Positions 1,241 through 28,101 of a stretch of DNA of 64,000 nucleotides are shown here, in pieces. Numbering within the stretch: the first letter of the stretch is position 1; each line of letters opens with the position of its first letter. The stretch covers positions 2,108,001-2,172,000 of the forward strand of contig NW_026889756.1 of NCBI RefSeq assembly GCF_033153115.1, given 5' to 3'. This stretch comes from Saccostrea echinata (Eukaryota). The notes under the pieces were generated by a model that saw only the letters and a program-made list of their open reading frames with translations, was not told the origin of the DNA and ran no database searches. Position numbers and translations under genes: made by a program.

Positions 1241-2999
1241 AATGATCTAGTAATTCACTTAAAGCACAAATAGTACCTTATTGACAATGAAAAGTCCATA
1301 ATATTTGGTCTCACCTGTAAATCTAACATGGCTAATGGAGAGCTGTGTGTACACTGATATTACATCTGCTTGTTTTGTGGTCATGAGATTTAGGTACTTG
1401 TACATTGGTTGATAGGATAAAATGACTTTTGTTGGTTTCAGCGTGCTACATTACAGATAAATGAGTATAAAGTCGTTGTAAACTATGTAGTATTTGACCA
1501 AATTATCTTTGCAGATATTAAAAAGCACCTTATCTGTAGGTATATTGTTTTATAAGTGGGCAAAAAGTGTCTTTATATGTAGTTGTGTAACAAGACTGTC
1601 TACACTTTTGATGATCTGTTAACTGTATTTTAGAGAAAGATCAATTATTATTGATATTTCCATCAATATAGCGACATATGAAAAACAAATAAATATGTAT
1701 TATAAGAGGATATGCATGATTTAAATAGGTATGATGTGCTTTTGTAAAATGTTCAAACAAATTGTTTTGAAAAATCCCTCTCTTTTGACAGTTATCTTAT
1801 GCAATTATATTCTTTGATTGTTTTTTTTTTGTTTCGTTAAAGATATANNNNNNNNNNNNNNNNNNNNNNNNNNNNNNNNNNNNNNNNNNNNNNNNNNNNN
1901 NNNNNNNNNNNNNNNNNNNNNNNNNNNNNNNNNNNNNNNNNNNNNNNNNNNNNNNNNNNNNNNNNNNNNNNNNNNNNCCATTCTGTGAGAGAAAGAACTA
2001 ATCGAGGGCCGTAGGCTTTTCTCCTACTGAAAACATGATTTCCTTTGTTCTGAAAATTAAATAAAAATGTACAAAATGACAGGTAGCACACAACCAATGA
2101 CAAGTTCATTGTTTACGGAATGGACAGTCACAGGTAAGCTAGTGATGCAGAGCAATTTGTTGAATAGCCATTGTGTTTCCAGATGCAAATAAAAAAAGGT
2201 CTTAAGAATGGACAGTTAAAGGTGGATTTTGTGGGATACTAGTATCTATACAAGTATGCGATGCTTCTATATCAGTTTACAGTTTGCGTTGTAAAGGCAT
2301 ACATGTTTACTTGTGATGGAGAGAGTATATGAAAGAATCAAAATCTAATAAACAAAAATATGCGCAAAATTAATGATATTTAGATCTGGAAACAGAAAAG
2401 TAAGAGTAAAAGAAATACTACCCAAATTTTGACCCAAAAATGAACTTCGACGACAGATACAGATGATCAAATTCGAATCAAACTTGGAAATGTTTTATTT
2501 GAATTCCATTTTTGAAAATATATTAGATGCAAATTCTTTTCTGAGTGTTGGATTAGCCATGAGCCAATCTTCGACCTGAAATGTTTTTCAAATGTTTCAT
2601 TTTTATTTATTTTCTACCGAAATATTAACTGCAGCAGTGTAGTGTTCATGGGGCAAACAGTTTTCTGGGTGGAGGATTTAATATTAGAAGTACTTCTATC
2701 TGAAGTCCTCGAGGGAATGATTTTTACGAAATTGTAATCAAATGTGAAATTGTGTCATTTGAATTCAAGTTTTGTGAAAATTAAGTTTTGAGTATTGAAA
2801 TAATGTGCATTACTCATAGATTTAAAAGAGTAAAATCGAGTGGATGCTGTGCAGATATTGTGTTCTGGATTAACTTTGATCTCCGCGTTCCTTTTGTTAT
2901 TTACATGTAAATTAAAAAGTATCTAATATATCTGTTTTTGTTTCCCTCTTGAACACATTCCAAAGTTTACCTGTAACTCTCCATTCTGTTTGTTTTAAC

Positions 3000-4231: not shown

Positions 4232-4599
4232 NNNNNNNNNNNNNNNNNNNNNNNNNNNNNNNNNNNNNNNNNNNNNNNNNNNNNNNNNNNNNNNNNNNNN
4301 NNNNNNNNNNNNNNNNNNNNNNNNNNNNNNNNNNNNNNNNNNNNNNNNNNNNNNNNNNNNNNNNNNNNNNNNNNNNNNNAACGTCAAGGTCTTTCTTTAC
4401 CTTTGTCCATCAATGTACCCTTTTATCCTATTTCCCTTATTACAACATGACTTTACTGGTAAACAAACATCGAATGTTTGGAAAACTACATAGCCATCAG
4501 ATCAGGAAAGTCTCTAATACGATTTTTGGATCAATCTTTAATTATTTTTGAAGAATCTTAAAATTAAAATGAGAACTCGTATTCATATCTGAAGAGCAA

Positions 4600-6395: not shown

Positions 6396-8429
6396 AGGGC
6401 ACATTTAATAAAAAAAATATTGTTTGATTAAAATATTTATCTGCTTATTGAAAATTCAGTCCTGAAAAAATCATGTTTATAAGATCTGTGGTTAAGCTAA
6501 AATTAATTAAAATGTCAAATGCTCAGTGAAAGTAACCTGAGCTCCGCAGTTTCCGCTGTTATCAGCTGCCTGACGTAAAGAATGTGAACAGATGCAGGGA
6601 CAGCCTCAATGTTGTTATACTGCATATATTGCATACATGTATAAATGAAAATGTCCTCTGATGCTCACAGTGAAACAAAAGGGGTAGAATTCGAAGATGT
6701 GGAGCAGGTGGGTGTTCAAGTACACATTTAGATAGAGTGTCCCTGCACTATTTTCTATTTAAAAAGGAATCACATCTTGTACCAAAGTGGACTGCCTTTG
6801 TTAGACTCAAGAGAAAATGGCCTGAGGGGTCTACTAGATATTCCAGGCTGTGTGAATTACATTTTGATGACTCTTGTTATGGGTGAATAAAAAAAATAAT
6901 GACCACCAAATTTTTTTTTTAAAATTCAACTAACCATAACATATATTTCTTAATTGTATATATGAAAGAAATTGGCTTTTTGATTGCTATTATATATGAT
7001 TTTTTTCAATTCTGGTTTGAAAAGTTTTAATATGAAAGAAATATAAAAAATAAATTCACCCAAAATTACTTTTTTGTCCATTTTTAAAGTCAATTCTTTA
7101 AATCTAAGCCAAAAAAAATTTGATATACAAGTGTTCTTACAAAAAATACTAGATTTTGAAGTTATCCTATGTAACATTATTGTGCTGTACTCCTGACATC
7201 TGATATGTATTTTATTCAACATTGTTTTGAAAATTATGATACAAGCAATAACTCAAAAAGTTTGCAAATCAGTTCATCATTGTGATATTTTGTATTATTT
7301 ATGGCACGTTTTTCATATTTTCAAGGCTTGAAAACATGATTATTTGCAATGTAATATATACATTGTATTTAAACATTTTTAAAAATATATGTTAACTGAT
7401 GAAAACTATTCTCCGAATAGACTGTAAAATGTCCAAACAATTTATCTGTACTTTGTTGATAGACATAATGATTTGAAAATCAAATAGTATAAAACATTTT
7501 CTGCAATATATTATTTAATAAAGATAGATGAAATTTATTGATAATTATAAACCAGTTTTATTACACCCCTGATTGCAGTAAAATTCAAAATTAAAACCAT
7601 ACAACATAAAAATGCATAAAATGTTGGCAACATAGAGTGGTAGCTAAATTGTCCAATACTACATAATTAAAGCACATGAAAGTATTTAAACTATAGGCTT
7701 TATATCTTGAATTATTCCCTTTTTATGTCAAAAAAAAAAAAACTAGCAAAAATTTATATTTTATAGAAGATAAAATATATTTTATGGCATATTTTCCTGC
7801 ACGGGGCAAACACTGAAAGCAATTGAGGTCAACCAGAATCATTCTACTCATCAATTTTTTCATTGTATTTATTCATATTTGATAAACGATAATTCTTATA
7901 TTTTTGTTGCACTTCTGACCAAGAGCACGGGAGTATTCAAAGTAAAATTGTGAAGCATAAATTAGATTAGAACTTGTTCTGCGTTTTAGTGAAGTTGAGG
8001 TGTAATACTTGAATTTTATAACAATTTTCCGCTTTAGGCTCATATTGGTATGGGAGAATACCAAGGGCAGTGTTTTCTGTCCCAATGGTATCAAAATCGG
8101 TATCATCATGGTCAGAAGAATCTTCACTAAGATCTTCTTTTTTGTCTCTCCTCTTCCATATCCAAATCAAACCAAATATCATTTTCTTTTAATATTTCAA
8201 TTTCATCTCTCGCGGACACATTTGTGACATTGCGCATTCCACAGCCGATAAGAGAGTTTTTGCTGCTTTAACTCTCGTGTGCTTCCGTGAGGAGGCAAAA
8301 AATGTCAAATTTAATTGTTTTTTATTAGCTTAACCACTGCAGATAAAGAGGTGTAGATTTTTCATGTGTTTATAGGTAAATTATCTTTATTGATTATAGT
8401 GAACAGAAAATATTTCACTAAAGGTGCCT
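6396..8429. mobile_element. Degenerate Kolobok-like DNA transposon
   Basis: TTAA flanks at 6392-6395 and 8430-8433. Imperfect TIRs AGGGCACATTTA / AGGCACCTTTA (reverse complement). THAP-like remnant CELHFDDSCY at about 6852-6880 (+). Acidic tract plus LPYQYEP at about 8030-8130 (-), resembling the second (KolX/P2X7-tail-like) ORF. Confidence 0.5.
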
Positions 8430-8915
8430 TTAACGCTGGAAAGTATGTATTTTGTACAACAAGAACAACAACATCAAAACAACCACAACAAGTTAATTCA
8501 GAGAGTATGTGTCCCCCACTAAAGAAAAAAAAAGAGTGGAAGAAATGGAAAAATTTTGCAAATGTAGAAAAAAGGTCAACCTTGACCATTCAGCTTTTGG
8601 CCTCAAGGGCACATGGATTTAAAGTTCAGTTTTTTTATCCTAATTTGCTTGCAAATTTGGGCGGGTGAGCAGACTTTATTTTTTATTTTCCATGTCTGAA
8701 AACATCTTACGATCTTCTTATACAAACTTTTCACATTGTAAATGCCAATATGGATATATAGATTTTGTTGTTTATTCCTTTAAATGTGTACAGAAGATTC
8801 TTTTTGTATAAAAAAATCATCACACGGTATTAATGATTTTATGAAATCGTAAGTCGTTTGTAAATGCCACACATAACTGCTTGTTTGAAATTGGGCGCGG
8901 ATCCAAATACTTATA

Positions 8916-10164
8916 CAGCATAGTGCCATAAATGAGTCAAATTTTTTAATGGCGTGCAATTATAAGCGCCGCTTCAAAACTTCGAAGTTACGTTGTAGAA
9001 AGAAAAACGATATCATATCGATTTTTTCATGATCAAAGGGAAGTAACGCTTACTGAGTTTTAATTTCCGGATTTTCGTTAGCGAATTTGATTTTGTTATT
9101 ACTCTACTTCCTTGTTTACGAAATGGCAAAACACGGCAATGAAATGTCAGACGACACTATCATAGGGTGCGTTCAGAGTTCTACCAGTAGTACCAACTTT
9201 CAATATACCAATGTTAATGTCAGAGGAGAACGGACACTTTCTCGCCTTGTTAAAAATTCGCGTAGGATAACTTTAAAGGATATAACGGCAGAATTCAACA
9301 ACAGTACACCGGTTAAAGTTTCTCGTCGCACAATACAAAGGACCCTTCACTCCATGGGCTATACAAGGCGATCTTTTCGGAAGTCTGTAGAAATTCGGGA
9401 CGTAAACAAAAAGAAACGCATAGCTTGGTGCAGAGGGAAGTTAGATTGGAATGCCAATAACCACTTGAAAAAGGTGATGTTTTCCGATGAAATGATGGTT
9501 ATTATTAAACCTGACGGAAAGTTTAAAGTATGGAGGAAGTCATCGGAAAAATGGAGACCTGAATGTTTGAGCCACTTTGCACCAATGTAGTCTGCTTTTA
9601 TTAAAATAATGGTATGGGGATGTATCACCTACTATGGGGTAGGAAGTTTAGCATTCATAAATGGAAATATGAACTCTCAGAAATATATCCAAACACTTGA
9701 TGACAATATTTGGCAGGTTGTTGTTGAACATTTTGGTAATAGTACATGGTACTTCCAAGATGACAATGCCCTATGTCATCGGTCCAATGAATCTTAAAAT
9801 TGGAAACATCAGAACAGAATTCACGGATAAGTTGGCCTTCGCAGTCTCCCGATTTGAGCCCAATCGAGAATATTTGGCTATTAATGAAAAACAAAATCAA
9901 AAACAGACTTTACCTGATCCATAATGTAAATGACTTGAAAACTCAGTTACTGAGGTCTTGGAATGAAATCCCTGTATTTTACATTCAAAGACTTTATGCA
10001 AGCCTTCCAAGAAGATGCAGAGAGGTACGGATCCAGAAAGGTGACATCACAAAATATTAGAAGGATTAGAGTTCATTAAAGAGGCTGGTAAGGAATTTAG
10101 GTTGAATTTATATGATTCAAATGGCAGCCATTAAAAAAGTTGACTCATTTATGGCACTATGTTG
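8916..10164 (+). mobile_element. Tc1-family transposon with inactivated DDE transposase
   Basis: TA target duplication (8914-8915, 10165-10166). 38-bp TIRs cagcatagtgccataaatgagtcaa.ttttttaatggc with 2 mismatches. Transposase motifs VSRRTIQRTL, VMFSDE, MVWGCI, FQDDNA, WPSQSPDLSPIENIW are split across ORFs 9087-9590, 9609-9797 and 9800-10060 by a stop and a frameshift. Confidence 0.95.
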
Positions 10165-13019: not shown

Positions 13020-15979
13020 GTTTTTGTTGTTTATATATATATATATTTTTTTTTTGTGTATAATTATTTTGAAACAAGCTTTGTAATGATAATTTGACTT
13101 ATCAAAACGATCGAAGTCCGATTTCCAAATTTTGCGCTATTGATTAGTCATTATTAGGCTATTTCCTCCGATGTTTATTTGATTTCTTATTCCGGAAAAA
13201 AAATACCTTTTATATCCGGGACCAAGAAACCCTCTGAGCAAATATTCCCCAAATGCCAGAAAAATTATCTCTCTTAGCTCTTCTTGGATGTTCTGGCTCT
13301 TTATATCTTTTGGACTTTTTGGCGCTCATCTTTTATTCAAGATTTATATTACAACCTTTTTGGACTTTAATTATCAAACATCCATGCCATTTTAGCAAGT
13401 GTTATTTTCCGTTGGTCGCCACATTTAAGGTATACAAGCCCGAATTCCTTCATTATTCAACCAATTTAAACTAGTCGTACTGGGCATTTGGGAAAAGATA
13501 ACACAATTTTTCTTACGAATTTATGTTAACACAAGCTACCTTTAATTCGCAATTTTAGTATTTTAAAGATTTTGGCCATTATAGCGAGCGCAGCGAGCGG
13601 CGCGAAACGCCGCTCGTCACTGTGAGCTCTTAAAGCAACGCCTGGGCGAAGAGAAATTCGGACTTTGCACATTGATCCTAACGATTTTTTTCCGCAGTAA
13701 CATGTGGTCCCATAATGCTTTGCGAATTGCATCTCGCCGCAAACTACGTTCAACAAAAAATAAAATCACATTGATTTTATGGATATTGCAGAAAAAACAG
13801 TAGATTAAACATTCTTCATTAAAACTAGCACTGTTCAGGCTTCGATTTGATACTGCAACTTACAGTCAAGACGAACCAAATGCCACGTGCGGTTTGAAGA
13901 GACGATGTAAATTGTATATGTATCTGCGCTCGCCCTAACGGTCGCACCGTCAACATATTATTTCTGCCATAGAAGTTTAATTTGGTTGCTCAAAGGGGAA
14001 CATTCTTTAGTTGGACCTCCAAGATGGCGGCCAAGGGAGGTAACTCGCAAGGAAAATACGTCATACGAAAACTATCTATTCTGAAATCGTTCAAGGATCA
14101 ACATATCATGGTGAATTAATAAACATTTGAAAGAGTACAAAATCTTGTTTTTAACATTCATGCACATATTACGGCTTTGAGATATTGTGTTTGAGTAAGT
14201 CGTAAAGAACAGACCGGAATGTTTAAATAATACGAGAGGCAGATGATCTACATAAGTAAAAATTGTGAATTTTAGCCACAAATTGACCGATGAGAAATTT
14301 TTATTTCTAAGAGTACAAATTCTAAAAAGATCGAAATAAAGAAACTTTGTATACAATTCGCTGAACGTCTCCAGTGTTTCTCCAGTAGCGACAAAGTAAA
14401 GACGTCTGAAAATACAACCACCCCTCCACATATATATGTTTGCGGCTCCCCCAGCTACATATTGATCAGTATCGTCAAGACTCGAAAATTTAAAAGGAAA
14501 TCACCCACTTCTATTTATAGATATACCTTTTCAATTCAAGACCAATCTATGTTACATCAGTGCTATATTTTCATAGGTGCAAGAATGTCATATAACGCTC
14601 TTTTTACATATTCATTACATATGCAATGCCATTTAAATAGCAAACAGTTCTTCGTATATAGCATGTTTAGCAAGCGTAGAATTTTTTAAGAACATGGTGA
14701 AAATTTTTTATGTAGAGTGGGTCTTCGTGCCAAATTTTTGCAAGTGTAAAAAGAAATATCTTTCCATTGCCTTTCATTATTTGTTCTCAAAAGAAAAATG
14801 GAGCGAAGACCCACTCTATTGTAAAAATATACTTATAGCATCCAATTTATGTCGGTTTAGTGAAAATTGAGAGTGTTGCCATTTTGGTGCGTTAATCATA
14901 ATGAATTTCGCAATTACTGTATTCATGCATTATCAATTTTGTATGCAATTAGTAATAAACATTACCTAGCTAAATTTAACTAAAAAGTACAATTTTTGAA
15001 AAATAAATTTATTGATTTCTTTTATTCGTTGAAGGCATGTGGCTCGGCTTATCCCCCCCCCCCCCCGGTTCTTTATCATATAAGGGAATTATTAACATTT
15101 AAAATCATTATTGTGTAATTAGCGTTTAAACACAAGTATATTTACATCCACTGAATATTATCTTGTTTATTTCTTTAAGAAAACTAACGTTTATCAGTCA
15201 GTAGATACCGCTAAGCATATGACCTCTACAGATTTATTGAGCAGTGGCTCTTCCATCAACATATAATGACGTAAATATAGATAATACAATATTTCATCTA
15301 CTTAATCCTACTTTAAATGATTATTTGTACAGATATAAATATAAACAATAAAATGTCTTTCTTAATTTGTTAGTACAGGAATTAACATTACAGCTGTTAA
15401 AAAAAAAAAAATTACATAACCCGCTTACGCAGATTATTCATTTTTTCTGCAACAACTGTAACATTAATTTTTGTCCTAACAACCAAAGAAAGCATTTTAT
15501 TGGGCCACCTTTAAAAAATTGCTTGGTTGCCCCCTCCCGTCCGACTGGCTTAAAATGGCCTGACTCAAGACCTTTTTTTAATGAACAGGAAGCAATTATT
15601 TTTTTAAGTATTCTTGGAAAAAAAATTAAAAATTCAGCATTGAAAATGGCATTTTCTGAGAATTTTTTTATTCCTCACCTACCTACCGACCCACTTTTTC
15701 CATCCCATAGTGTCGTTTACTGATTTTTATTTGAAAATAAAAATAAGTACACGACTATACATTTTAATTTTCAAATAAAAATCAGTAAACGATAATATTA
15801 TGCGTGTCTACGATATTAATATATATGTAGTTAATCCTTCCTTTTACTTGGAAGGGTGAGCAAGTTCGGAAAAATGTCCATTCCGAAGTTGTCCGTCCCA
15901 CTGTTAAGGATAGATTCTGTCAAAAATCATTTTAAACGTTTCATCGGCCTCTATTTAAAAAACATAAACTTTTCCTAAT

Positions 15980-17179
15980 TTATAATCGTTGCAAAACATA
16001 ATATTGAAATATTCCAAAATTGTCAACAGCTGTTGCCACGCACTGCACAACTTTATAGCCTGCAACAGCTCTATAATTAGCGGAGGAGAGGAGCACTGGA
16101 GTGTGTCCAAAAATTATCATATACCCGCCCCTTTTCACGGTTGGAAGAAGAGCAGTCAGCAGATCTTCTGCCTCTGTTGACTTCACGACTTCTGAGTTTA
16201 GAAAACGAACAAAACAGTAATCAGCCGTCCCTGGTTCTATTTTTGGCTCCATGGCATTCCCACAATGCACCTCGTCAACCCTTTGGCGGGAAATTTCCGT
16301 CATCTGCTTACTAAGATCTTGGCCTATTGTATAGCTGTCGGGAAACGCGTTTTTAAGTGTAGACAGGAAAACACCAGTTGAGCAAGCTGGGTCATAGAGT
16401 CTGGCGTTCTTTATTTTAGCGGATGCCATAAATTGAATGGTGTAATCTCTGATTCTTTCTTCACCACAACTCAGCATGACGTCAAAGGCATCATCTATCT
16501 CCCAACCCTGTGGCGGAGAACAGAGCTCCTCGTGTGTCGACTGCCTCAGTAGCGGGTATGGAAAGACTAATTCTGGCATTCCAAAAGAACTGTTCATCAC
16601 TTGGTTCATGAAATACAGTTTTTCTGATTTGTCAAATGGGTAGAAATGCACAATGACTTTGTTTTCGGTTATTCTCTGATCCACAAAGAGGCCAAGGAGC
16701 ATGTCCGCCGAGATGAAACTGCAATAGAGTTCGGGAATCTTGTTTTTGATGAAAAAATCAGAGAGGATTTTTCTTCCCAGAATTTGAACTGGACTTGGCG
16801 TTCCCGGAACAGCAATGTTGAGGTAGAACAATCCCTGGGGCAGCTCAAAGAAACTAACATCTATCCGAGTGATTGGCCTCCGACATACTTCATCCCAGCT
16901 CGCTTCTCTCTTCATGGCAACCCCAGGTTCGATTTTCTGCGCCTTATACCTGACGATCTCGTCTCTGATCGTTGTCAGAGTTTTCTTGTCCCCCACACTC
17001 CGTTCGGATTCTATCAGCGCTTGATTAAGAATATCCTCTGCCTTTTTCCAATCCCCTTTGGAAAGGTTAATCCGAATGTCAGTAAACATTTCCCGAATTT
17101 TCTCATCGTACATATTCTTAAAAATTCCATCGTATGTTGTCACGACTTTTGTAGATTTTAATGCTGGGTCCTTCTCCAT
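15980..17179 (-). CDS. Intronless class I SAM-dependent transferase, Nat/isonocardicin synthase-like 3-amino-3-carboxypropyltransferase (ACT), 399 aa
   Basis: Long uninterrupted ORF. SAM motif I LYDPACSTGVFL, motif II TIGQDLSKQM, then VHCGNA, FVRFLNSEVV, KRGGYMIIFGHTPVLL and terminal IFQYYVL. I recognise this motif series from bacterial proteins annotated as isonocardicin synthase (recall, not a search). Confidence 0.8.
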   Translation of the reverse strand: MEKDPALKSTKVVTTYDGIFKNMYDEKIREMFTDIRINLSKGDWKKAEDILNQALIESERSVGDKKTLTTIRDEIVRYKAQKIEPGVAMKREASWDEVCRRPITRIDVSFFELPQGLFYLNIAVPGTPSPVQILGRKILSDFFIKNKIPELYCSFISADMLLGLFVDQRITENKVIVHFYPFDKSEKLYFMNQVMNSSFGMPELVFPYPLLRQSTHEELCSPPQGWEIDDAFDVMLSCGEERIRDYTIQFMASAKIKNARLYDPACSTGVFLSTLKNAFPDSYTIGQDLSKQMTEISRQRVDEVHCGNAMEPKIEPGTADYCFVRFLNSEVVKSTEAEDLLTALLPTVKRGGYMIIFGHTPVLLSSANYRAVAGYKVVQCVATAVDNFGIFQYYVLQRL

Positions 17180-19926
17180 TATTAGTGTAAAACTTCTTAC
17201 CCTAGTGTGTCCTAGTGGTTGGAAAGGTGAATTATTGATAGCATCTCGCTGTACTTGAGAGATAAGCCACGTTTAGTTTGGAAATTCTGATAACGCCGCT
17301 ATCTGAAATGTGGCCGTGTTTAAATGACGAGATAATGAGGGTCACTCAAGTGTAACATAAACACGTGTAATGCCAGCATGATCATTACCGCAGCACAAGT
17401 CCTGTTGATCATCGTAAGATGGGTATTTCATTTGGTATGTAAACATTATTTTCGGTAATTTAAGCAAATCCTTTGGATAAATGACATACATCTTAACAAA
17501 AAGGGAATGTTATATGAACAGTATTGCAGTCTCCATATGCATTTTATAAAATGTGTCATCTTTCAAGTTATCAAATACAGTTGATATTTCAAACGTAGTA
17601 GTGGCCTGAGACCACTACAATGTCCCATTTTTGATACCCCTCGAAATAGAACATGTGTACTCCAAGGTTCGTGTAGTTTTCTATTTGGTGATGTCAATCT
17701 GCCGCTGGAAAATAATATTACTATCTTTATTTATGTGCAGAAAGATATTGTAGCAACAAGGATGTAAACATATCGATTTTTGTTGTTGTGTTTATGCACT
17801 GCTTATCTCTGCTTTTAACAGTTTAAGCTTAATATGATTATGTACATGATGTAGGAGCAACATCTTAAATTTTCCTTTGTAGTAATATTCTTCAGAATTA
17901 CTTTGAAATGTTTATAGTCTATTTTCAAAAAATATTATGTTGTGCAATTTTTCTTCTCGCATTGATTATTTCTAATTTCATTATATTCAAGTTCTTGTAT
18001 ATACAAGTGATATATATTAAACATGTTAAACTTCATACTTTATTTCCCTGCATTAGGAATACAATCCGTCAAATGTATTTATTCATTGCACAGTACAACT
18101 TTATAAGGGTACATTATTTATCAGTTAACTTACAAAACAAATGAGAAGACGGGTTTGTTTATGTTTCTATTAATGTGCATAGCTTCAATGCTAGTAAATG
18201 TTCTGGTTGACTGTCTTATTACAACTCTCGTGTATATGAACAGCCATTTAAGTGCCTTCAACAGGTTGGAGAGAATGCTCGAAATAGGGTATTATCAGAG
18301 AAATCGCATAATACATGTAAATTGTCCCCGATATCGGAATGTCATTGAATCAGCGAAATCGGGTATCCCGTGCAACTTTTTGTAAAAGCAAGAAAATAAA
18401 GCAAAGGCGCATGATGTCAGTTAGTGTTACTTGTACATCAGTGTCTTGGGGGTTTATTTTCATTGAACCTAATTTGCAGGTTAATCTAAAGAATTCAAAA
18501 TGACACGACTAACACATCTGGGGTAGCATTGAAGTCACGACAGCGTCATTATTTTTCAATGCCATTACCAAAACCAAATGATTACATTTTTTTTTACTTT
18601 ATTTTCTACTGATACATTCCCCAAGCTTCATTTCTAATTTTGTGAATTATTCACAAAGTGTAGAACTTTTAAGAAATTTATTCTATACCTTAAAATGTAT
18701 GGTGTCCCCTTCCCGCTAAAAATCAGACGATGCTAGAAACAATTACAATGTAGTATTGGTTTCCTATCGATATAAAATTATACAGGGACATTCGTAAAGC
18801 AGAAAAATAAAAGATTTTATGCATAGACAAGTGGGTTATGTAAGATTTAAAGACACGCATATATAAAAATCAGATTTTATTATCGGCGGAAGAAGCGATA
18901 GATCTTTATGCTTTGATAGAAAGAGCACATCTAAAAATGGTTTAATGTTTCTATTGAATAACACCTAGTATTAAGTTATTAACAAAAAACCTAATTTTAT
19001 AAAACACACTGCCTTATACTCAATCACATTTTTATGTTTCATGTTGTTTTTTTTTTTTTGGGGGGGGGGGATAACTTCTCATACGATATTCATTAATGAT
19101 TCTTAAGTTTACACTCCCCCCCCCCCTCAAAATGGGATTGCGAAAGATACATAATTTATGCAAATTGCCACTATCCTATTTTTCTATACTTCAAAATATT
19201 TATAAGAATATATTATCTTAGTTACATGTAATATTCCAGTAAATCAATTTATTCATCATACAATGTTTATAAATGTAGAAGCACAGCCCTCACACTCTTT
19301 TTTTTCTGAGAATATACTTTTGCTGTTAATTCTGACCAAAAATATTTATTCAAAGGAAACCCCCTCCCCTCCCCCTTTTTTTTAGTTTTATCTACGCAGC
19401 CCATGTAATTGATCTATATATTTATTTATTTTTAAATAAATTTATTTTTTTCTGCCTGTCAATTTTTAAACCTAACCCTTACAAAAATTCTACTTGTCAA
19501 AATTTCACTCCACCTCTCGAAATAGCTTCTTTCGAGTTTAGCGAGTTTTTATTTAGTGTGTGCGAGCGTGTAAGCCCCCCCCCTCCCCCTCCCCCCCCCC
19601 CCCCCCCCGGCAGAGACTTTTAGAAATTCAAAATGCAAAATACATCGGTCTCACGTCGGGAATGTCCGGTCAACAGAGGATTCTTACTACTCCTAGGCTG
19701 CAGGCACCTGTATTTTATGACCTGTCACAAATATGATATTTTATAAGAATTTTGCGATCAATTACTGTTCATTATCTTTACGTTGTTTATGTACAAATAC
19801 AAGATCTAACACGTTATATCGTTCTTCAACATGTGAGGGTGGGGGTGGAGCTACATGTAGCAATATAATTGACTACTCTCCTAAAAGTCTTTGACATACA
19901 AACATAGAAAAAAATTATTATTGTTA

Positions 19927-21201
19927 AACCCCTGTCACACCGGGACTGCGTCCTCACGGCGATCGCACGGCGTCCATAATAAATGCAAAACGCCGAGGTG
20001 AGCGCAGTAGAGTCTCCTACAGCGCCGTGACAACGCGGCGAGATCTCCTCTGAACGCGGTAGGGTCGCGTAGGGTCTCCTAGAACGCCAGGGGACGGCGC
20101 GCACTTTGGGCATGCACAAAGTACGCGCCGTGTGATCGCCGTCTGGTAAGAACGCAGTAGAAACGTAGTATGATCGCCGTAGCAGCGCGGTGAGATCTCC
20201 AACAACGCAGTGGGAGCTCCGTACGCACGCCGTGAAGACGCACATGATCGCAGCATGGACGCAGTGATAGTAGACTGCGCTTCCACGGAGACCTCGCCGA
20301 GACCTTGGAGATGTCTCGGCGTTTCTATCACGCTTTTACGGCGCTTCTAATGAGATTAATTGTCTTGTGATTTTTTTGACTGCGATTACACAGCGACAAC
20401 AAGGAGTTGTCACTGCGATCATTGCGCTCCCTTGGCGTTTCTACCGCGAACGTTGGCGATCACAATGCGCTTTCACGGCGTTGTTAGAGCGTTGTCAGCC
20501 AGCTCACAAAACAAGAGCAATGGCCTCATATTTGATCAGCAATAATTCTACCGTATTTGTTGCACTCCTGGCCAGGAGCATGGGAGTAGAATTGGGAAGT
20601 AAAAATTATACCAGAACCTGTTCTGTTGTTTCAGTGGAGTTGCGGTGGAATTACTTAAATTTTATAACAACTTTTTAGTGTGTTTATTTTTTACATTCAT
20701 AATAAAATCAATGGAAAAACACATCTGAATTGATATAATTGAAAAAAAAGAAGGGTTTTAATTATAAAACTAACAGTAATTTAGTACTAAATTATTCAAA
20801 TATATCATTTTTTGAAGTATTTTCGTTATGTGACTCGAATCTTTAAAAATAAATGTGTTACACTCCTGAATATATATCCATAGTGAAGAACGCATCTTTG
20901 ACGTATTGTGAACACAGCAAGCGCAGTGAGAACGCCGTGAACGCGAGATGACAACTCCTAACACGCCGTAAAAGCTCCGCGGAAGCGCAGTCAATCGCGA
21001 AGAGATCTCCGTTGGGAACGCAGTAGCCCGCAGCGAGAACGCCGTAGAAACGCGTGGGTCGCCGTAGGGACGCCGTGACATCTTCACATTGTAAAAATTT
21101 TACAGAAATTTGTGTGATTTCCCTGCGATTCCACTGCGATTTTAACATTTTTACAACACCGTAATGACTCCGTGTGGACGCAGCTTGGTGTGACAGGGCC
21201 C
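19927..21201. mobile_element. Non-autonomous TIR DNA transposon (Harbinger- or Kolobok-like), GC-rich arms with AT-rich core
   Basis: Imperfect TIRs ccctgtcacaccgggactgcgtcctcacgg ... ccgtgtggacgcagcttggtgtgacaggg, flanked by TTAA on both sides. Internal sub-repeats cgccgt, acgcagt and gagatctcc. Confidence 0.75.
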
Positions 21202-21696
21202 TTAAAAATTCGGGAAAGTTGGAAATTTCCAGATTTGAAAATAATATTTCGTTGGAGGGGGTGTGTGTCTTCAAACACTATTGATAAGGGAAAAATGAAA
21301 TACATTGGTATGGGGGAATTTGACTATCCTACAAAAAAGTGGGGAAAGCAAATTAGGCAATGTTTATTAATGAATCTTTTTGTGGTATAAATTTACAGTT
21401 AATCATTATGTTTTGGAAAAATTAGAAGGGGGGGGGGGTCATACTACTTGAAAAGTTCGTGTATTGGTATTGGTATTTAGTTCTAGTTCGAAATATTTTA
21501 TCCATTAAATAGTTGATACATTTTGTAATGAATTTGATTTTAAGCAAAATATAAATATGAAAGCAAATAATATATTATATAATATTACATTTTTATACAC
21601 ATATAAATATATTACATATATTATACACACATATTAGGATATGAAAGACAAATCTTTCCCTTCGCTTCGTGTTGACGACCTTTAAAAATTGCTTTC

Positions 21697-22593
21697 ATGC
21701 ATTGGTACTTTTTTATTCTTTGCGTCTTTTTGCTGCTGAAGGTTCTGTATTACTTTTAAATGCTAAAAAAACCCCGGTAGCAATTAAGTGATCTTTACTG
21801 TCCACTATAAATCTGGTTTTTATTTTAATCAGGTTCCTCTCACGAAAGGCTACATACCAGAGCCGGGGAGATTCCTCCGGACTTTACTAACCCTGACGTT
21901 CCATGGTGACAAACTAAAGAAACTCGAGTTCCTTACGGAATACTATTTCTACTATGGACTGTTCAAGTTTGATGCCAAGATTTACATTTTTAATCCGAAA
22001 CTAGCACAGCATGCTATATATAAACTTGAAAAGGGAGCGGAACATTATTTAGAAAATTCACCTTTAAAGAACACGTTCCTTGGATCATCACAGAAAAGTC
22101 CCGAAACAAGGCGCGCTATAGCGTCATTATTCCGAAAAACTTCAATTGAGGAACGCGCTGCTATAATGATAAGCGACATACAGAAAATGTGTACAATATT
22201 CAAGAAAGATCCGAAGGGCATCGTAAACGTCACACAATGGACTCTTCGGATGGCATTGGACATTGTCGGCCATGTCTTACTTGAACTTGATCTTAACGGT
22301 TTGGAAAAGAAGCAAGAGAAAATGATTTCTTCGATGTTGACGATTTTGCATAGATGTTATGCCATGGGAGAAATATCATCAGACAGTAAAGAGTTCTCTG
22401 ACGCAAACGAAGAATTTGATGCCATCACACAAAGGGTTTTAGAGGAAGCACTCAGCATTGATAACGTCACAATTAAGGGAAAACGACTGGTCAACTCACT
22501 GCACGACGCATGCGGATTCAGCGAAGTAAGTATAACATCTCATGCGTTACTTTAAGTTCAGTAACGTGTACATGGCAAAATCTGTATCACACT

Positions 22594-22624
<31 letters not shown>

Positions 22625-24185
22625 GATAGCTCATTTTGATCAAGGGTTGATACTAGTATGGGGTGTGATACAGATTTTTACATGTATTGTTGGGTTATTT
22701 TTATGTATTTGAAAATGATGTCAACAAGTCATGTATAAATGTACCTATAAATGTACTTTTAATAATTTCATGTGTCTTTTTTTTGTTGAATTTCCAACAT
22801 TAATTAGTCCAATGATAATACATTCAGCGATAAGAATAATGAAAATAATTATAATTAAACAAAATAATTATTTTAAATGATATGAAATTAAATTGGAATT
22901 TTAATAAACCTCAAAAACAATAGAAAAGGATCCGATCGAGGTACTCCGAATGAAAAGTACAGAGGTGTTCCAGGAAAGGTGTATTAAAGAGTGAAATAAA
23001 TGGTGATGAAACAGGGTGATGATACAGGGTTCGTGCCTGTGTTCATATCGGGGATGCAAAAAACCTGTATTATATAACAAATATCTAATAAAGTTTTTTT
23101 TAAAAATAAAATGTGATACTGAAATGTGTTCATCTTTCAATTTTTTTTCCTTTCATCTGCTCAGGCCAAAGACAACATGAAATTGTTTTTGATGGCGGGA
23201 ACCGAGACCACCGCCTCTACTATTCCTGTGGTGATGTATCTATTGGTCAAATACCCACATATACAGGTAGAAAGATCAATAAAACTAACCAAGAACAATT
23301 TAAAACATTTCAAATCGCTCATAAAATGTGCCTTTGTTCTCAATACTAGATAGATATGGTGTTATTTGTCAGTTTTTATGTATACATGTAAGTTCTTTTG
23401 AACATAAAACAGGAAGAGTTACGACAGGAAGCGGAAGAGCTCCTTGAATCTTTGGTGGCGGATCCCACCACACCTTTACCTAAGACAGAGAGCGTACTGA
23501 CCGAGGTGCTCCGATTGTACCCGATTGCACCGTTTATCAGCAGACAGAATTACGAGCCGGTAACTCTCGGTGACGTCAACCTGAAACAACATGTAAGTTT
23601 GACTGACAAACAATAATAAAAATATCCCTTTCCCTGGAAAACACTTTAATCCAGTCCTTAAAATAATGATTTTAATATTATATCTATTCAGTGATAAACT
23701 GAAGTCTTACAATTTTTATTCACTTGAGTTAATATAAGGCAGTGCTTAGCCTTCTAAAAATCAGTGATTGATGGAATTAATGTACATTTTTGCATATATT
23801 TACATGATACATCCACCCCTCATGAATTCACACTTCATTTTAGGCTGACGTCATCATATTTACTTGGGGAATTCATCGCAGCCCGCATTATTGGGATAAA
23901 GCAAAGGAATTTGTTCCCTTCCGATTTCTAAACACAAGCAAAACTTCCGGAAATATGTTCATTCCGTTCGGTGCAGGTTCTCGAGTGTGCATTGGACAGC
24001 ATCTGGCTTGGCTGGAACTGAGGCTCGCCGTAGCTATGTTGTTATATCAGTTTAAGTTTGAGCATGCGCAGGAGACACCAGAACTGAATTTTGTGGTAGA
24101 CTGGGCGCATGCTGTTGTGCATCCAGATAAAGACATGATCTTTAAAATTACACCAACACAGAACGACCCCATCACGCTCTCATGA
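21697..24185 (+). CDS. Divergent cytochrome P450, about 453 aa; exons 21697-21741, 21833-22525, 23165-23266, 23413-23592, 23844-24185
   Basis: All introns GT-AG and phase 0. N-terminal hydrophobic anchor MHWYFFILCVFLLLK (exon 1 is the least certain), I-helix AGTETT, ExxR (EVLR), PFRF as a PERF variant, heme motif FGAGSRVCIG. Confidence 0.92.
22577..22678. repeat. Small inverted-repeat element (MITE-like) in a P450 intron
   Basis: aaaatctgtatcacactccata ... tatggggtgtgatacagatttt. Confidence 0.6.
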
Positions 24186-24819: not shown

Positions 24820-27800
24820 CTATAATTCTGTATTGCACAAATGGCGCACCATATCGGGGGTTTTTGTTTTGGCTACGAGATCACTCCAATTGTTATATCT
24901 GAAATACACCAAAAAAAGGACTGATCAAAATATAAGTGATAATAGAAATAAAGCAACTATCGATAATTAATGGACATATTCAACAAACCTGGTTTTCGGG
25001 TCTACCGTCATATTGTTGTAATCACTGCACACGGAGGCAGCCATACAGGAACTCAGAAGACTGTATATGGTTTCTCTTTCTGCTAAGACCTCAAGTGGCG
25101 ACATCTCACCGGAAGTCCATTGACGAATCATCCACGCAGCGTCATACGACGAGAGGAAGCCTCGACCACATCCGGTTCCCAATGGCCAGAAAGGCTTTTA
25201 AAAAACGGTTATGAATTGTGAATTTTTTTAAATAATGAGGACATTTTGAGAGTTATTTACAATCAAACTAGTAACTTAAAAATTAACTCCAAGAAATAAT
25301 GCTCATACATATTTTTTTTTCCTTTTTAAAGAAGGCTTGAACTCCATATCAAGCGTTAATACCTTCAGAAAACAACCAATAAACATTTAACATTTTACTT
25401 ACCTCTAACAGGCTATCCCCTACAAGTCCCATTAACAGTTTGTGTCCGTTCCTCACCAGAACACGTGACGCACTCTCAGAATAATACATGGCAGTAAAAT
25501 CAAAGATGGCAACGTCAGGTTCACCTCGATAATTGGTTTCACATTCTAGATCCGGAAGTAGACCGTCTGTACACACTTCCGCTACATTACAGGCGAATTT
25601 GGTTAGTTTTACTTTGTCTATGTTGTCCGGAGCTAATAATGCCTTTGCATTTGGTTGGTTGGATTTTAAAACGCCATTTTTGAGTAAGCTTTGTTTTAAA
25701 GCAGTCATCACAAAATAATGTGTTTCGCCTTTAAAATAAACACAGTTCTCCAGCAGAATGTCTTTCTTGTTCACCAGATTGTGGAAATGCTCAGGTTTTC
25801 CCCATACGGCTAATCCCCCCAGTTCCTGAACCTTGGCCTCTTGGTTTGTATATTTCCGTTTAAAGTTTATGGTAACTGCTATTGCTAGGGGCCCACGTAT
25901 TTCTTTCCGAACAAAACCTGTAGATAAATTTATATTTTTACTTAATAAAGACATGTACAGTTTTGCACAAAAGTAAACTAGATCTTGGTTATCTGGATAT
26001 CAATGAAGTGTAATCCCAGACAATGAATTTGTAAAATGTACTTTTATTTCATACACACCCGGTAGCGTTTCGCCTTTTCCGTCTGCTCCAATAATGACGG
26101 AGAATTGATAATCAGATAAAGGGTGGTCTTCAGGTGTACACCGACATCGCCAACCCACTGTAAGAAAATGAACAAAAAATACTCATCAGTTTGCATTTCT
26201 TGACAACCATGTCTACACTTTAAATTTTCTGAAAACAGTCTCCCAGCACTAGAATGTATCAAAATGTACACAAACATGGTGTCCACAATATTCATTTCAT
26301 TGAATGATAGATGACAAAATCGTATTATTTCGTCAGAATTTTAATGTAAACGCAGTACTTCTACTTTTAATGTAAACATTCCCTGTCATTTTTTTAACAT
26401 AAACCTAAGAATTTATAAATGATTTAACTTAATAGAGATCTTGCATTACTGACTCTACACGAATTTGCTGATCTTACCGTCTGCATTATCAACAGGCGGA
26501 TCCAACAGTCCATCATACGCCACATTTGTGTGCACTTCCACCCCAAGTAACAGCGCAACTTTAAGTAAAATACTTTGTAGTCTCCGGATACCTGATAGAG
26601 AAATCAATAGGTTAATTAGGACTGAAACTAAATCATTGCAATGAATACTGGTGTTTGTGAGCAGCTCCTCCCCCACCCCTTTTACATACATCCCGGTCCC
26701 AGGGAATTTTTAAAGTTGTTTGTTTTAAATTGTTATAGTTTCAAGATTAAAAAAAATAGAAAAATCAGTGAAAAATAATACTTTTTTATTTAAAAAAACA
26801 AACAAACGAACAAAAAACCATGGTGCCCACCATTTGGAAAGGTATACCCCCCTCCCTCAAAGATGAAAACATTTACACTTTGGCAAAGGTGTTTTATTTG
26901 TTTTAAAAAATCAAGTGTGTTAATATAACACAATTTTTACTTACTGATGTGACTTATTCCTCCGACACAAAACTTTGAAAACAATTCCTTTGCTCCTAGA
27001 TTCTTCAGGTCCTCGATGACAAACGGCCAGAGGTGAAGGGTGTTGTGACGGGAAAAAGAACAGCGCTTCTCCATAACAACCACTATGTATCCTAGCAACG
27101 CAACTTCAATGGCGGTTCGAAGGCCACATGGTCCGGCACCAATAACTAAAATCTTTAATAAAAAGTACAAGCATTTAGAAAAGAAATATCTCACGAGCTT
27201 AAAACATAAAAACTGAAAAGAAATGAGGCAGTAAATCACGAATGCTGAATTTGTACGAACGTCGATGAGGACAAGAGAAATAACTATAAAATAGTCGTAA
27301 ACATCCGGAAAATCTGAAGACGTTAAATCACGGTGAAAAACTGCAGGAAACAGTTTTTCGTACACTGGATGGAATTAAAAAGTCATGATGGGGTACAACT
27401 GGTATTAATACTTTTTTACGACCTTCAATAATTTTTCAATTATGATAAAAAAAACTCAATATTTGATGTATTATTACGAAAAAAATCGATCAATAAAATT
27501 TGACAAATATACATGTAAAATGTTGCTGTTGTGCCATAAATATGTTGGTTTCGTTAGCTCATCATGTATTTCCGCTACAATCTGATTATAATTGCATCTT
27601 TTACTTTGTTCCCCAATCGCCTGACATTTTTATTTTATTTTAAAGACATTCCAATATTTCTTTCAAAATGACCCTATGATTCATTCCTGTGATTATAATG
27701 TAAAAATGTATAGATACATAAATAATTAATAAATCGAGTGACATTTTTGTTTTATTTTTAAGAAATTCCAGCATATCTTTCAAAACGAACCTATGATTTA

Positions 27801-28101
27801 TTCAAGTGATTATAATGTAAAAATCTATAGATATAATTATAATTGAATAATTTGTACTTACCTTTGCGTGTTGACAGCCTCGATTGTTCTGAAAGACCTC
27901 AACGTTTCGTTTTCTGGTCAGTTTGCTCAAAAGTGGCCTGGCGCGCCATGACGTCACTTTAGAGGAGAAATGTTCTATCAGCTCCAATCTATTTTTGATG
28001 TTTTTCAAGTCCAGTTCGTAACAGAGGGAATCAAAATATTCCAAAATGTTTCCACAATTGTCTGTTTTCATGAACTTTTCAAAAATCTCGTTTGCATTCA
28101 T
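24820..28101 (-). CDS. MICAL: MICAL-family FAD monooxygenase, monooxygenase domain only, about 486 aa; exons 28101-27862, 27152-26945, 26591-26478, 26157-26059, 25917-25403, 25194-24989, 24898-24820
   Basis: Frame-consistent GT-AG exons give [82 protein letters not shown]...[15 protein letters not shown] on the - strand at about 24652-24657. This is a family assignment, not an orthology call. Confidence 0.9.

What the first reader, a model, noticed from the sequence alone, without database searches (positions are those of the whole stretch)
15980..17179. Intronless bacterial-type aminocarboxypropyltransferase-like gene, likely horizontally acquired
Seen: a 1200-bp intron-free CDS among intron-rich neighbours and host TEs, so it is unlikely to be a contaminant contig. 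The motifs YDPACSTG, GQDLS.QM, RFLNSEV, FGH.PVLL and FQYYV match my recollection of bacterial Nat/isonocardicin synthase-like proteins rather than any standard metazoan methyltransferase. The first ~85 aa look like an added helical segment (KGDWKKAEDILNQAL). Inference: an HGT-derived enzyme that transfers the aminocarboxypropyl group rather than the methyl group.
Basis: partly seen in the sequence, partly recalled or inferred. Interest (0 to 1): 0.8.

Follow-up and report, generated by a model that had tools for sequence, protein, structure and literature searches.

The report
Oyster bursatellin-pathway aminocarboxypropyl transferase gene

Summary
A single 399-aa open frame lies at 15980-17179 on the minus strand, and every quoted motif is present.

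It matches isonocardicin synthase (Nat, PDB 8zhu) at E 6.6e-39. A confident AlphaFold model (pLDDT 91.9) superposes on Nat (TM 0.87-0.90), far better than on any ordinary methyltransferase.

It is not a contaminant:
- It sits in a 7.7-Mb contig of a 923-Mb oyster genome.
- A high-copy host repeat and multi-exon animal genes flank it.
- Transcript-like contigs are colinear with it.

Orthologues are 80% identical in Crassostrea virginica, 77% in Ostrea edulis, 53% in Mytilus and 49% in Haliotis. Outside molluscs and rotifers, every relative that could be named is bacterial.

The transfer is therefore ancient. It predates the bivalve-gastropod split and a duplication into two mollusc clades.

The family is already described. 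Venugopalan & Schmidt (JACS 2025, PMC11869996) showed that the Mytilus "ACT" of the bur-ox (bursatellin/oxazinin) cluster aminocarboxypropylates N-formyl-tyrosinol.

In this oyster the gene sits 4.6 kb from a P450. The FmtATR synthetase and flavin monooxygenase genes lie on another contig.

The scan had not noted this gene on other DNA.

The parts
15980..17179 (-). Complete single-exon CDS (399 aa plus stop) of the aminocarboxypropyltransferase (ACT), a homologue of isonocardicin synthase.
   Evidence: ORF. PDB match to 8zhu at E 6.6e-39. Single copy at the DNA level in the genome.
16937..17104 (-). N-terminal three-helix segment (aa 26-81). Helix 1, together with the disordered aa 1-25, is missing from the ~335-aa bacterial forms. 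Helix 3 carries the invariant E74.
   Evidence: AlphaFold secondary structure H26-40, H44-60 and H62-81, with pLDDT 87-97. Alignment A1.
16565..16870 (-). Beta-rich N-domain (aa 104-205), shared with Nat.
15986..16492 (-). Class I SAM-binding Rossmann-like domain (aa 230-398). It carries the family-invariant motifs D263-PACSTG, GQD288, R325-FLN328, GHT360 and FQY394.
   Evidence: Pfam Methyltransf_25 over aa 263-352. Invariant columns. Motif positions.
15684..17436 (-). Approximate extent of transcript-like contigs in four public runs. They are colinear with the genome and show no joint inside the CDS.
   Evidence: tables 2, 5 and 8. The runs are only guessed to be RNA.
15726..15731 (-). AATAAA polyadenylation-type signal. 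It lies about 40 nt before the lowest coordinate reached by the contigs and inside a MITE-like palindromic repeat (15707-15800).
   Evidence: Sequence. Repeat hits in both orientations.
19925..21205 (.). High-copy dispersed host repeat inserted between the ACT and the P450.
   Evidence: 1187 first-look candidates; the 40 scored are 86-97% identical and lie on many contigs.
21788..24185 (+). Neighbouring multi-exon cytochrome P450, divergently oriented. ORF pieces are at 21788-22555, 23126-23353, 23398-23616 and 23955-24185. It is the presumed bur-ox P450.
   Evidence: Pfam PF00067 matches on all four pieces, including the heme-Cys exon at E 3.5e-12. Splice sites and the first Met were not determined.
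24820..28101 (-). MICAL-type FAD monooxygenase-domain gene next to the P450. It is a separate finding of the scan, and its membership of the pathway is untested.
Evidence: PF25413 Rossman_Mical at E 3.7e-42, and a FAD-binding GxGxxG exon.

Best explanation
The gene encodes the oyster orthologue of the mollusc 'ACT' enzyme of the bursatellin/oxazinin (bur-ox) pathway. This is a Nat/isonocardicin-synthase-type, SAM-dependent 3-amino-3-carboxypropyl transferase.

Shown here:
- It is intact and single-copy, and polymorphism suggests purifying selection.
- It is homologous to Nat in both sequence and structure over both domains.
- It belongs to mollusc clade A, which in other molluscs lies beside the FmtATR NRPS.
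- It sits 4.6 kb from a P450, and its genome also holds a single-exon FmtATR NRPS with flavin monooxygenase (FMO) genes nearby.

Taken from the literature: the Mytilus californianus enzyme transfers the aminocarboxypropyl group of SAM to the phenol oxygen of N-formyl-L-tyrosinol, making the O-homoserine ether.

Inferred:
- The oyster protein does the same reaction and releases MTA rather than SAH.
- The family entered a mollusc (or earlier spiralian) ancestor from bacteria. It then duplicated into clades A and B before bivalves and gastropods split.
- The coding sequence has stayed intron-free while acquiring eukaryotic expression signals.
For: - Sequence: ORF; PDB 8zhu at E 6.6e-39 over aa 114-398.
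- Structure: AlphaFold pLDDT 91.9 and pTM 0.90. Foldseek's top hits are 8zhv/8zhu at E about 1e-29 and TM 0.87-0.90, against E about 1e-8 for the best methyltransferases.
- Orthologues: C. virginica 80%, O. edulis 77%, Mytilus 53%, Haliotis 49%.
- Trees: mollusc clades A and B together are starred at 95. Clade A follows bivalve and gastropod groupings, and the animal sequences sit among bacterial ones.
- Clade A lies with FmtATR in other molluscs. In Sinanodonta the locus tags are ACJMK2_036135 (ACT) and ACJMK2_036132 (NRPS) on contigs of identical length. In Mizuhopecten both are on a 312,184-bp scaffold. In an unnamed, Mytilus-related genome (sister to Mytilus in the tree) both are on a 2,206,407-bp contig.
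- Context in this genome: P450 next door; a 1595-aa FmtATR ORF on C9; FMO genes 19-26 kb from it.
- Expression and selection: transcript-like contigs are confined to the gene; variants in them are 13 synonymous to 6 non-synonymous.
- Enzymology and cluster description: PMC11869996.
Against: - No enzymatic or metabolite data exist for this species.
Mytilus has both a clade A and a clade B gene. Assigning the assayed enzyme to clade A therefore rests on synteny in other species, not on identity.
- In this assembly the ACT and the NRPS are on different contigs (C7 and C9), so the tight cluster of Mytilus is not reproduced.
- The four runs used for expression are only guessed to be RNA.
- I did not verify that the neighbouring P450 is the bacteria-like bur-ox P450. 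The PDB search was not discriminating.
Confidence: 0.85

Rival explanations
1. It is an aminocarboxypropyl transferase of the Nat family, but in oysters it acts on a different acceptor. It would then not be part of bursatellin/oxazinin synthesis.
For: The ACT and the NRPS are unlinked in this assembly. McalACT is reported to be promiscuous. A MICAL-type monooxygenase that the paper does not mention sits in the local gene group.
Against: The gene is orthologous to the clade that lies beside FmtATR in Sinanodonta, Mizuhopecten and an unnamed, Mytilus-related genome. This oyster genome keeps intact FmtATR and FMO genes. The paper reports the pathway genes in oysters.
Confidence: 0.09
2. It is an ordinary SAM-dependent methyltransferase that only resembles Nat.
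For: The only Pfam family over threshold is Methyltransf_25, at 29.2 bits against a cut-off of 27. There are weak NCBIfam hits to UbiE/BioC-type methyltransferases.
Against: Homology to Nat spans both domains and is about 30 orders of magnitude better than to any methyltransferase. All family-invariant motifs are kept. A mollusc member was shown to transfer the aminocarboxypropyl group (PMC11869996).
Confidence: 0.03
3. It is an old eukaryotic gene inherited vertically and lost almost everywhere, not a horizontal acquisition.
For: The trees are unrooted. An unnamed clade (P0111/P0113/P0117) is sister to the animal sequences.
Against: The named eukaryotic members are only molluscs and a bdelloid rotifer. 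Named bacterial members span many phyla. Many bacterial homologues sit beside NRPS genes, as in natural-product clusters. The CDS is intron-free, as is the FmtATR gene.
Confidence: 0.02
4. It is bacterial contamination or a very recent, lineage-specific insertion.
For: The open frame is intron-free and its closest non-animal relatives are bacterial.
Against: It lies 2.1 Mb into a 7.7-Mb contig. Host repeats and intron-containing animal genes flank it. Its GC (0.44) and GC3 (0.46) resemble the neighbouring P450 exons. Orthologues at 77-80% identity occur in other oysters and follow the species tree. The best bacterial identity is only about 40%.
Confidence: 0.01

Closest known systems
Mollusc bur-ox ACT (McalACT of Mytilus californianus; Venugopalan & Schmidt, JACS 2025, PMC11869996)
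   Same: Same protein family and, by tree and synteny, the same orthologue group (clade A). Same length class (397-399 aa), same N-terminal helices, and the same kind of neighbour (a P450). The genome also holds FmtATR and FMO genes.
   Different: Identity to the Mytilus clade-A protein is 53%. Here the ACT-P450 pair and the NRPS-FMO pair are on different contigs instead of forming one cluster. The activity of the oyster protein has not been tested.
Nat / isonocardicin synthase of the nocardicin pathway (PDB 8zhu, 8zhv)
   Same: Homologous over the beta-rich N-domain and the Rossmann domain (E 6.6e-39; TM 0.87-0.90). It shares the motifs YD(P/A)ACSTG, TIGQDLS, R-LN, GHTPVL and FQ-YVL. Both use a phenolic acceptor derived from an aromatic amino acid.
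   Different: Identity is about 30-32%. Nat is 326 aa and lacks the first ~65 residues of the oyster protein. Nat is bacterial and acts on nocardicin peptides. In the tree the actinomycete homologues branch further from the molluscs than the Amoebophilaceae, Bacillota and CPR homologues do; Nat itself was not in the tree.
Ordinary class I SAM methyltransferases (Pfam Methyltransf_25/11)
   Same: The C-terminal domain has the Rossmann-like SAM-binding fold.
   Different: The glycine-rich motif I is replaced by the family-invariant DPACSTG. There is an extra beta-rich N-domain. Structural matches are much weaker (E about 1e-8, target TM 0.6 or less). The group transferred, in the characterised relatives, is aminocarboxypropyl.
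Mollusc clade B paralogue (own genome C4:1483107-1484255; Mytilus trossulus XP_063441879 'isonocardicin synthase-like')
   Same: Same family, same invariant residues, a single open frame, and present in both bivalves and gastropods.
   Different: 39% identity. No P450 or NRPS lies within 10 kb in this genome. Its function is unknown, and the main text of the 2025 paper does not discuss it.

Membership tests
Nat/isonocardicin-synthase-type aminocarboxypropyl transferases | Significant sequence homology to Nat across both the N-domain and the SAM-binding domain | tested here: met
   phmmer against PDB: 8zhu_A at E 6.6e-39, query aa 114-398 aligned to chain residues 49-325.
Nat/isonocardicin-synthase-type aminocarboxypropyl transferases | Same three-dimensional architecture as the solved Nat structure | tested here: met
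   AlphaFold model with pLDDT 91.9. Foldseek ranks 1-4 are 8zhv/8zhu, with target TM 0.87-0.90 and E 1e-28 to 1e-29. The next hits are at E about 1e-8.
Nat/isonocardicin-synthase-type aminocarboxypropyl transferases | Family-invariant motifs (D-PACSTG, GQD, RF-N, GHT-P, FQY) | tested here: met
   All are invariant or at least 90% conserved columns in 64 diverse members, and all are present in the window protein.
Nat/isonocardicin-synthase-type aminocarboxypropyl transferases | Transfers the 3-amino-3-carboxypropyl group of SAM, with MTA as co-product | not testable with these tools
   Shown only for Nat and for McalACT in the literature (PMC11869996). Inferred here.
Mollusc bur-ox pathway ACT (orthologue of the clustered Mytilus gene) | Falls in the mollusc clade whose members lie beside the FmtATR NRPS | tested here: met
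   Clade A in the trees. Sinanodonta locus tags 036132 and 036135, the Mizuhopecten 312,184-bp scaffold, and an unnamed 2,206,407-bp contig each link a clade-A ACT with FmtATR.
Mollusc bur-ox pathway ACT (orthologue of the clustered Mytilus gene) | A cytochrome P450 lies close to the ACT | tested here: met
   P450 exons at 21788-24185, 4.6 kb from the ACT start codon. The clade B paralogue has none within 10 kb.
Mollusc bur-ox pathway ACT (orthologue of the clustered Mytilus gene) | FmtATR NRPS and FMO genes are present in the same genome | tested here: met
   A 1595-aa Fmt-A-T-R ORF at C9:53402975-53407762. FMO genes at C9:53426626-53435234.
Mollusc bur-ox pathway ACT (orthologue of the clustered Mytilus gene) | ACT physically clustered with the NRPS, as in Mytilus | tested here: not met
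   The ACT is on contig C7 (7.7 Mb) and the NRPS on contig C9 (54.3 Mb). If the two contigs abut, the genes are still at least about 3 Mb apart.
Mollusc bur-ox pathway ACT (orthologue of the clustered Mytilus gene) | The assayed McalACT sequence belongs to the same clade (A) | tested here: inconclusive
   The paper's supplement is not held, and Mytilus has both clades. The assignment rests on synteny.
Ordinary class I SAM methyltransferase | Canonical glycine-rich motif I and methyl transfer | tested here: not met
   Pfam Methyltransf_25 is only just over its cut-off, at 29.2 against 27 bits. Motif I reads DPACSTG. Methyl transfer itself cannot be tested here.

The most novel reading that the evidence does not exclude
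In oysters the bur-ox pathway is split into two sub-clusters: ACT + P450 + a MICAL-type FAD monooxygenase on one contig, and FmtATR + FMOs on another. The MICAL-type enzyme would be an undescribed tailoring step. Separately, the conserved clade B paralogue, present in Mytilus, oysters, scallops and gastropods but without pathway neighbours in this genome, would be a second animal aminocarboxypropyl transferase with a different, unknown acceptor.
Probability: 0.3. Interest if true: 0.5.

Novelty: already known. Interest (0 to 1): 0.2.

Why it matters
Aminocarboxypropyl transfer from SAM is rare chemistry, and animal-encoded biosynthetic pathways of bacterial origin are few. However, the mollusc enzyme, its bacterial ancestry, its cluster and its activity were published in 2025, and NCBI already names the oyster orthologues 'isonocardicin synthase-like'.

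Four modest points are added here:
- The family has two ancient mollusc paralogue clades.
- The cluster is split in this oyster.
- A MICAL-type monooxygenase sits in the ACT-P450 group.
- Bacterial homologues often sit next to, or are fused with, A-T-R NRPS genes.

Tried and rejected
I used contig-length and locus-tag fingerprints instead.
- The metagenome scan with a mytilid ACT returned only one 2.9-kb contig, which was useless for synteny.
- The protein Atlas could not read the new sequence. The C. virginica orthologue gave only a mollusc cluster followed by bacterial clusters.
- The paper's supplement is not held, so McalACT could not be placed directly.
- No paper on the 8zhu structure was found in the library, so catalytic residues could not be compared with a published analysis.
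- PDB searches with P450 exons did not show whether it is bacteria-like. Exon 1 had no hit. The heme exon hit both CYP3A/CYP17 and bacterial CYP102.
- A possible 5'-UTR intron, suggested by a contig that leaves the genome at 17436, was rejected because there is no AG acceptor there.
- tblastn found no P450 next to any of the 80 bacterial homologues.
- The spliced P450 and MICAL-like models were searched exon by exon only.
- The N runs in the window (1848-1977, 4232-4379, 32099-32252) were left as they are.
- The large representative-protein search was not used. It carries no names and could not settle the taxonomic distribution.

Full report
**Observation.** One search lists one uninterrupted ORF at 15980..17179 on the minus strand, with an ATG start and 399 aa. 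An in-frame stop lies 31 codons upstream of the ATG. Orthologues begin at the same position. The frame has GC 0.44 and GC3 0.46. The flanks have GC 0.33-0.37, and the neighbouring P450 exons have GC 0.36-0.47. The composition is therefore that of a local coding sequence, not of foreign DNA.

**Not a contaminant.** The window is G000:C7:2108001-2172000, inside a 7.7-Mb contig of a 923-Mb assembly. Several host features lie within 10 kb of the gene:
- a Tc1/mariner-type transposase remnant at 9087-9590 (PF01498, E 2.9e-16);
- a multi-exon P450 at about 21.8-24.2 kb on the plus strand;
- a multi-exon MICAL-type FAD monooxygenase at 24.8-28.1 kb on the minus strand (PF25413, E 3.7e-42).

The 1.28-kb stretch at about 19925-21205, between the ACT and the P450, is a dispersed host repeat. 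It gave 1187 first-look candidates, and the 40 scored copies are 86-97% identical on many contigs. The gene itself is single-copy at the DNA level. The organism is an ostreid-type oyster. The closest named proteins are Crassostrea virginica XP_022346107 (cluster representative 80% identical) and Ostrea edulis XP_056017047 (77%).

**What the protein is.** Pfam sees only Methyltransf_25, barely over threshold (29.2 against 27 bits). NCBIfam gives only sub-threshold methyltransferase hits. Against PDB sequences, however, the protein matches isonocardicin synthase (8zhu/8zhv) at E 6.6e-39 over aa 114-398. The next hit is at E 0.013.

An AlphaFold2 model built on a 64-sequence alignment is confident (mean pLDDT 91.9, pTM 0.90). 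It shows a disordered tip (aa 1-25), three helices (26-40, 44-60, 62-81), a beta-rich domain (about 104-205) and a Rossmann-like domain (about 230-398). Foldseek against the PDB puts the four Nat chains first, at E 1e-28 to 1e-29 and target TM 0.87-0.90. Ordinary methyltransferases follow at E about 1e-8 with target TM 0.6 or less.

Across 64 diverse members the invariant or near-invariant residues include D263, P264, A265, C266, S267, T268, G269, G286, Q287, D288, R325, F326, N328, H359, T360 and Y394. The canonical glycine-rich motif I of methyltransferases is replaced by DPACSTG. My reading that the RFLN motif helps present the Cγ of SAM instead of its methyl group is inference only.

**Distribution and phylogeny.** The word-based search found 199 relatives. 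The named ones are bivalves (Sinanodonta, Ruditapes, Ylistrum, Tegillarca, Mizuhopecten, Argopecten, Pinctada, Potamilus, Mytilus, Crassostrea, Ostrea), gastropods (Haliotis, Pomacea, Batillaria, Patella), the rotifer Rotaria socialis, and the bacterium Cardinium.

A scan of one genome per bacterial or archaeal species found 99 relatives, with at most 40% identity. They come from Bacillota, Mycoplasmatota, candidate phyla radiation (CPR) lineages, Amoebophilaceae, Chlamydiota, Rickettsiella, Legionellaceae, Streptomyces and other actinomycetes, Pseudomonas, cyanobacteria and others. The Atlas look-up with the C. virginica orthologue gave a mollusc cluster followed only by bacterial clusters.

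Two maximum-likelihood trees (quick IQ-TREE, LG+C20) agree on four points:
- Mollusc sequences form two clades, A and B. Each contains both bivalves and gastropods.
- A and B together are monophyletic (SH-aLRT 93-95).
- They join a Rotaria-containing clade and an unnamed clade (P0111/P0113/P0117) in a starred group.
- That group sits among bacterial sequences, and the actinomycete homologues branch further away (Nat itself was not in the tree).

Inside clade A the grouping follows taxonomy: oysters with Pinctada, then scallops, unionids, venerids, mytilids, and Haliotis outside. The best reading is a bacterial origin, followed by a duplication, both before the bivalve-gastropod split. The trees are unrooted and many rows are unnamed. 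One transfer versus several (molluscs, rotifers) cannot be decided.

**It is already known.** Venugopalan & Schmidt (J Am Chem Soc 2025, PMC11869996) describe the mollusc bur-ox cluster. It comprises an FmtATR NRPS, an 'ACT' that is an isonocardicin synthase homologue, a bacteria-like P450 and two flavin monooxygenases. They showed that recombinant M. californianus ACT converts N-formyl-L-tyrosinol and SAM into the O-homoserine ether (+101 Da, confirmed by NMR on an analogue). They found the genes in mussels, oysters, clams, scallops and several gastropods. They proposed ancient HGT predating the mollusc classes, and noted NCBI's name 'isonocardicin synthase-like'.

**Is the window gene that ACT?** Mytilus has both a clade A protein (M. 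galloprovincialis VDI72202, 397 aa) and a clade B protein (VDI70785; M. trossulus XP_063441879). I therefore used synteny.
- In this genome the clade A gene lies 4.6 kb from a P450. The clade B gene (C4:1483107-1484255, 39% identical, one open frame) has no P450, NRPS or MICAL-like gene within 10 kb.
- In other molluscs the clade A ACT and the FmtATR NRPS share a sequence record. In Sinanodonta woodiana the locus tags are ACJMK2_036135 and ACJMK2_036132. In Mizuhopecten yessoensis both are on a 312,184-bp scaffold, while its clade B gene is on a different one. In an unnamed, Mytilus-related genome (sister to Mytilus in the tree) both are on a 2,206,407-bp contig.

Clade A is therefore the cluster ACT.

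**The pathway in this oyster.** A Pfam Formyl_trans_N search of the genome led to a single 1595-aa ORF at C9:53402975-53407762 with the Fmt-A-T-R layout. It is 77-80% identical to oyster orthologues and 56% identical to M. californianus LOC127698786. The best FMO-like genes of the whole genome lie 19-26 kb away: C9:53433524-53435234 in two open exons, and C9:53426626-53428536 carrying stops. The pathway is thus present but split. FmtATR and the FMOs are on C9. The ACT and P450, plus the MICAL-type gene, are on C7. Even if the two contigs abut, the groups are at least about 3 Mb apart.

**Expression and constraint.** Four public runs (guessed, not recorded, to be RNA) hold contigs colinear with 15684-17436. 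There are no joints inside the CDS and no coverage of the unique flanks at 17566-18126 or 18688-19622. This pattern fits an unspliced mRNA of about 1.7 kb. An AATAAA lies at 15726-15731, inside a MITE-like palindrome. One contig leaves the genome at 17436, but no AG acceptor is there, so I do not call an intron. Variants in those contigs are 13 synonymous and 6 non-synonymous, as expected under purifying selection.

**The N-terminal segment.** Short bacterial forms (about 335 aa) start near oyster residue 45. They therefore lack aa 1-25 and helix 1 but keep helix 3 with the invariant E74. All mollusc and rotifer members carry the full segment, and so do unnamed long forms (P0088, P0110, P0113). 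It includes a conserved YDGIFK-like motif at aa 16-21, in a low-confidence part of the model. The extra part is thus about 45 aa, not about 85 aa, and it is old.

**Bacterial context.** In 30 of 80 bacterial loci an NRPS adenylation-thiolation(-reductase) gene lies within 8 kb of the ACT homologue. In one MAG (L028) the ACT domain is the C-terminus of a 1204-aa NRPS-like ORF. No P450 was found in those flanks. The bacterial clades nearest the animals (Amoebophilaceae, gut Bacillota, CPR) lack such neighbours. En-bloc transfer of NRPS plus ACT is therefore possible but not shown.

**Verdict.** The gene is a member of a published, biochemically characterised family, so its novelty is 'already known' and its interest is low.

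The Atlas could not read new sequences. Spliced gene models were searched exon by exon only, and the N runs were left untouched.

Noticed in passing
window 21788-24185 (+): A multi-exon cytochrome P450 sits 4.6 kb from the ACT in divergent orientation. It is the presumed bur-ox P450. Its first Met, N-terminus and exact splice sites were not resolved, and I could not show whether it is bacteria-like.
   Followed up: partly
window 24820-28101 (-): A MICAL-type FAD monooxygenase-domain gene lies directly beside the P450. The bur-ox paper does not mention it. It could be an extra tailoring enzyme or merely a neighbour.
   Followed up: partly
G000:C9:53402975-53407762 (L010 2975-7762, -) and C9:53426626-53435234: A single-exon 1595-aa FmtATR NRPS has one intact two-exon FMO gene and one FMO copy with stops 19-26 kb away. 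This is the other half of the bur-ox pathway, on a different contig from the ACT.
   Followed up: yes
G000:C4:1483107-1484255 (L002 1354-2655, +): A second, 39%-identical, single-exon ACT paralogue (clade B). It is conserved in bivalves and gastropods, including Mytilus, Pinctada, Mizuhopecten, Pomacea and Patella. In this genome it has no pathway neighbours within 10 kb. Its function is unknown.
   Followed up: partly
G000:C16:9562981-9595991 (L092-L095): A paralogous segment holds a remnant of the ACT 5' flank (74% to window 17293-17481), a P450 paralogue (about 80% DNA identity, exon 1 broken into different frames) and the 3' end of the MICAL-like gene. No ACT is detectable there.
   Followed up: partly
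L028 (MAG 'bacterium CG_2015-01t_44_12') 8001-9053; L053 (Xenorhabdus khoisanae); L044/L047/L055 (Rickettsiella-like): Bacterial ACT homologues often sit directly beside A-T-R NRPS genes (30 of 80 loci). In L028 the ACT domain ends a 1204-aa NRPS-like ORF. In L053 the ACT ORF runs on to 866 aa.
   Followed up: partly
window 19925-21205; also G000:C9:53412322-53413604: A 1.28-kb high-copy dispersed repeat with long spurious ORFs lies between the ACT and the P450. Another copy lies 4.6 kb from the NRPS on C9.
   Followed up: yes
window 15707-15800: A short palindromic MITE-like repeat, matched in both orientations at dozens of places in the genome, overlaps the 3' end of the ACT transcript and carries its AATAAA signal.
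   Followed up: partly
window 17117-17134 (aa 16-21): A YDGIFK-like motif is conserved in mollusc clades A and B and in the rotifer clade. It lies in the low-confidence N-terminal tip that short bacterial forms lack. It may be a lid or a partner-binding element.
   Followed up: no
window 17436: One 1237-nt contig of run X2 matches 17364-17436 and then continues with sequence not found in 14200-19800. There is no canonical acceptor at the break, and the cause is unknown.
   Followed up: partly
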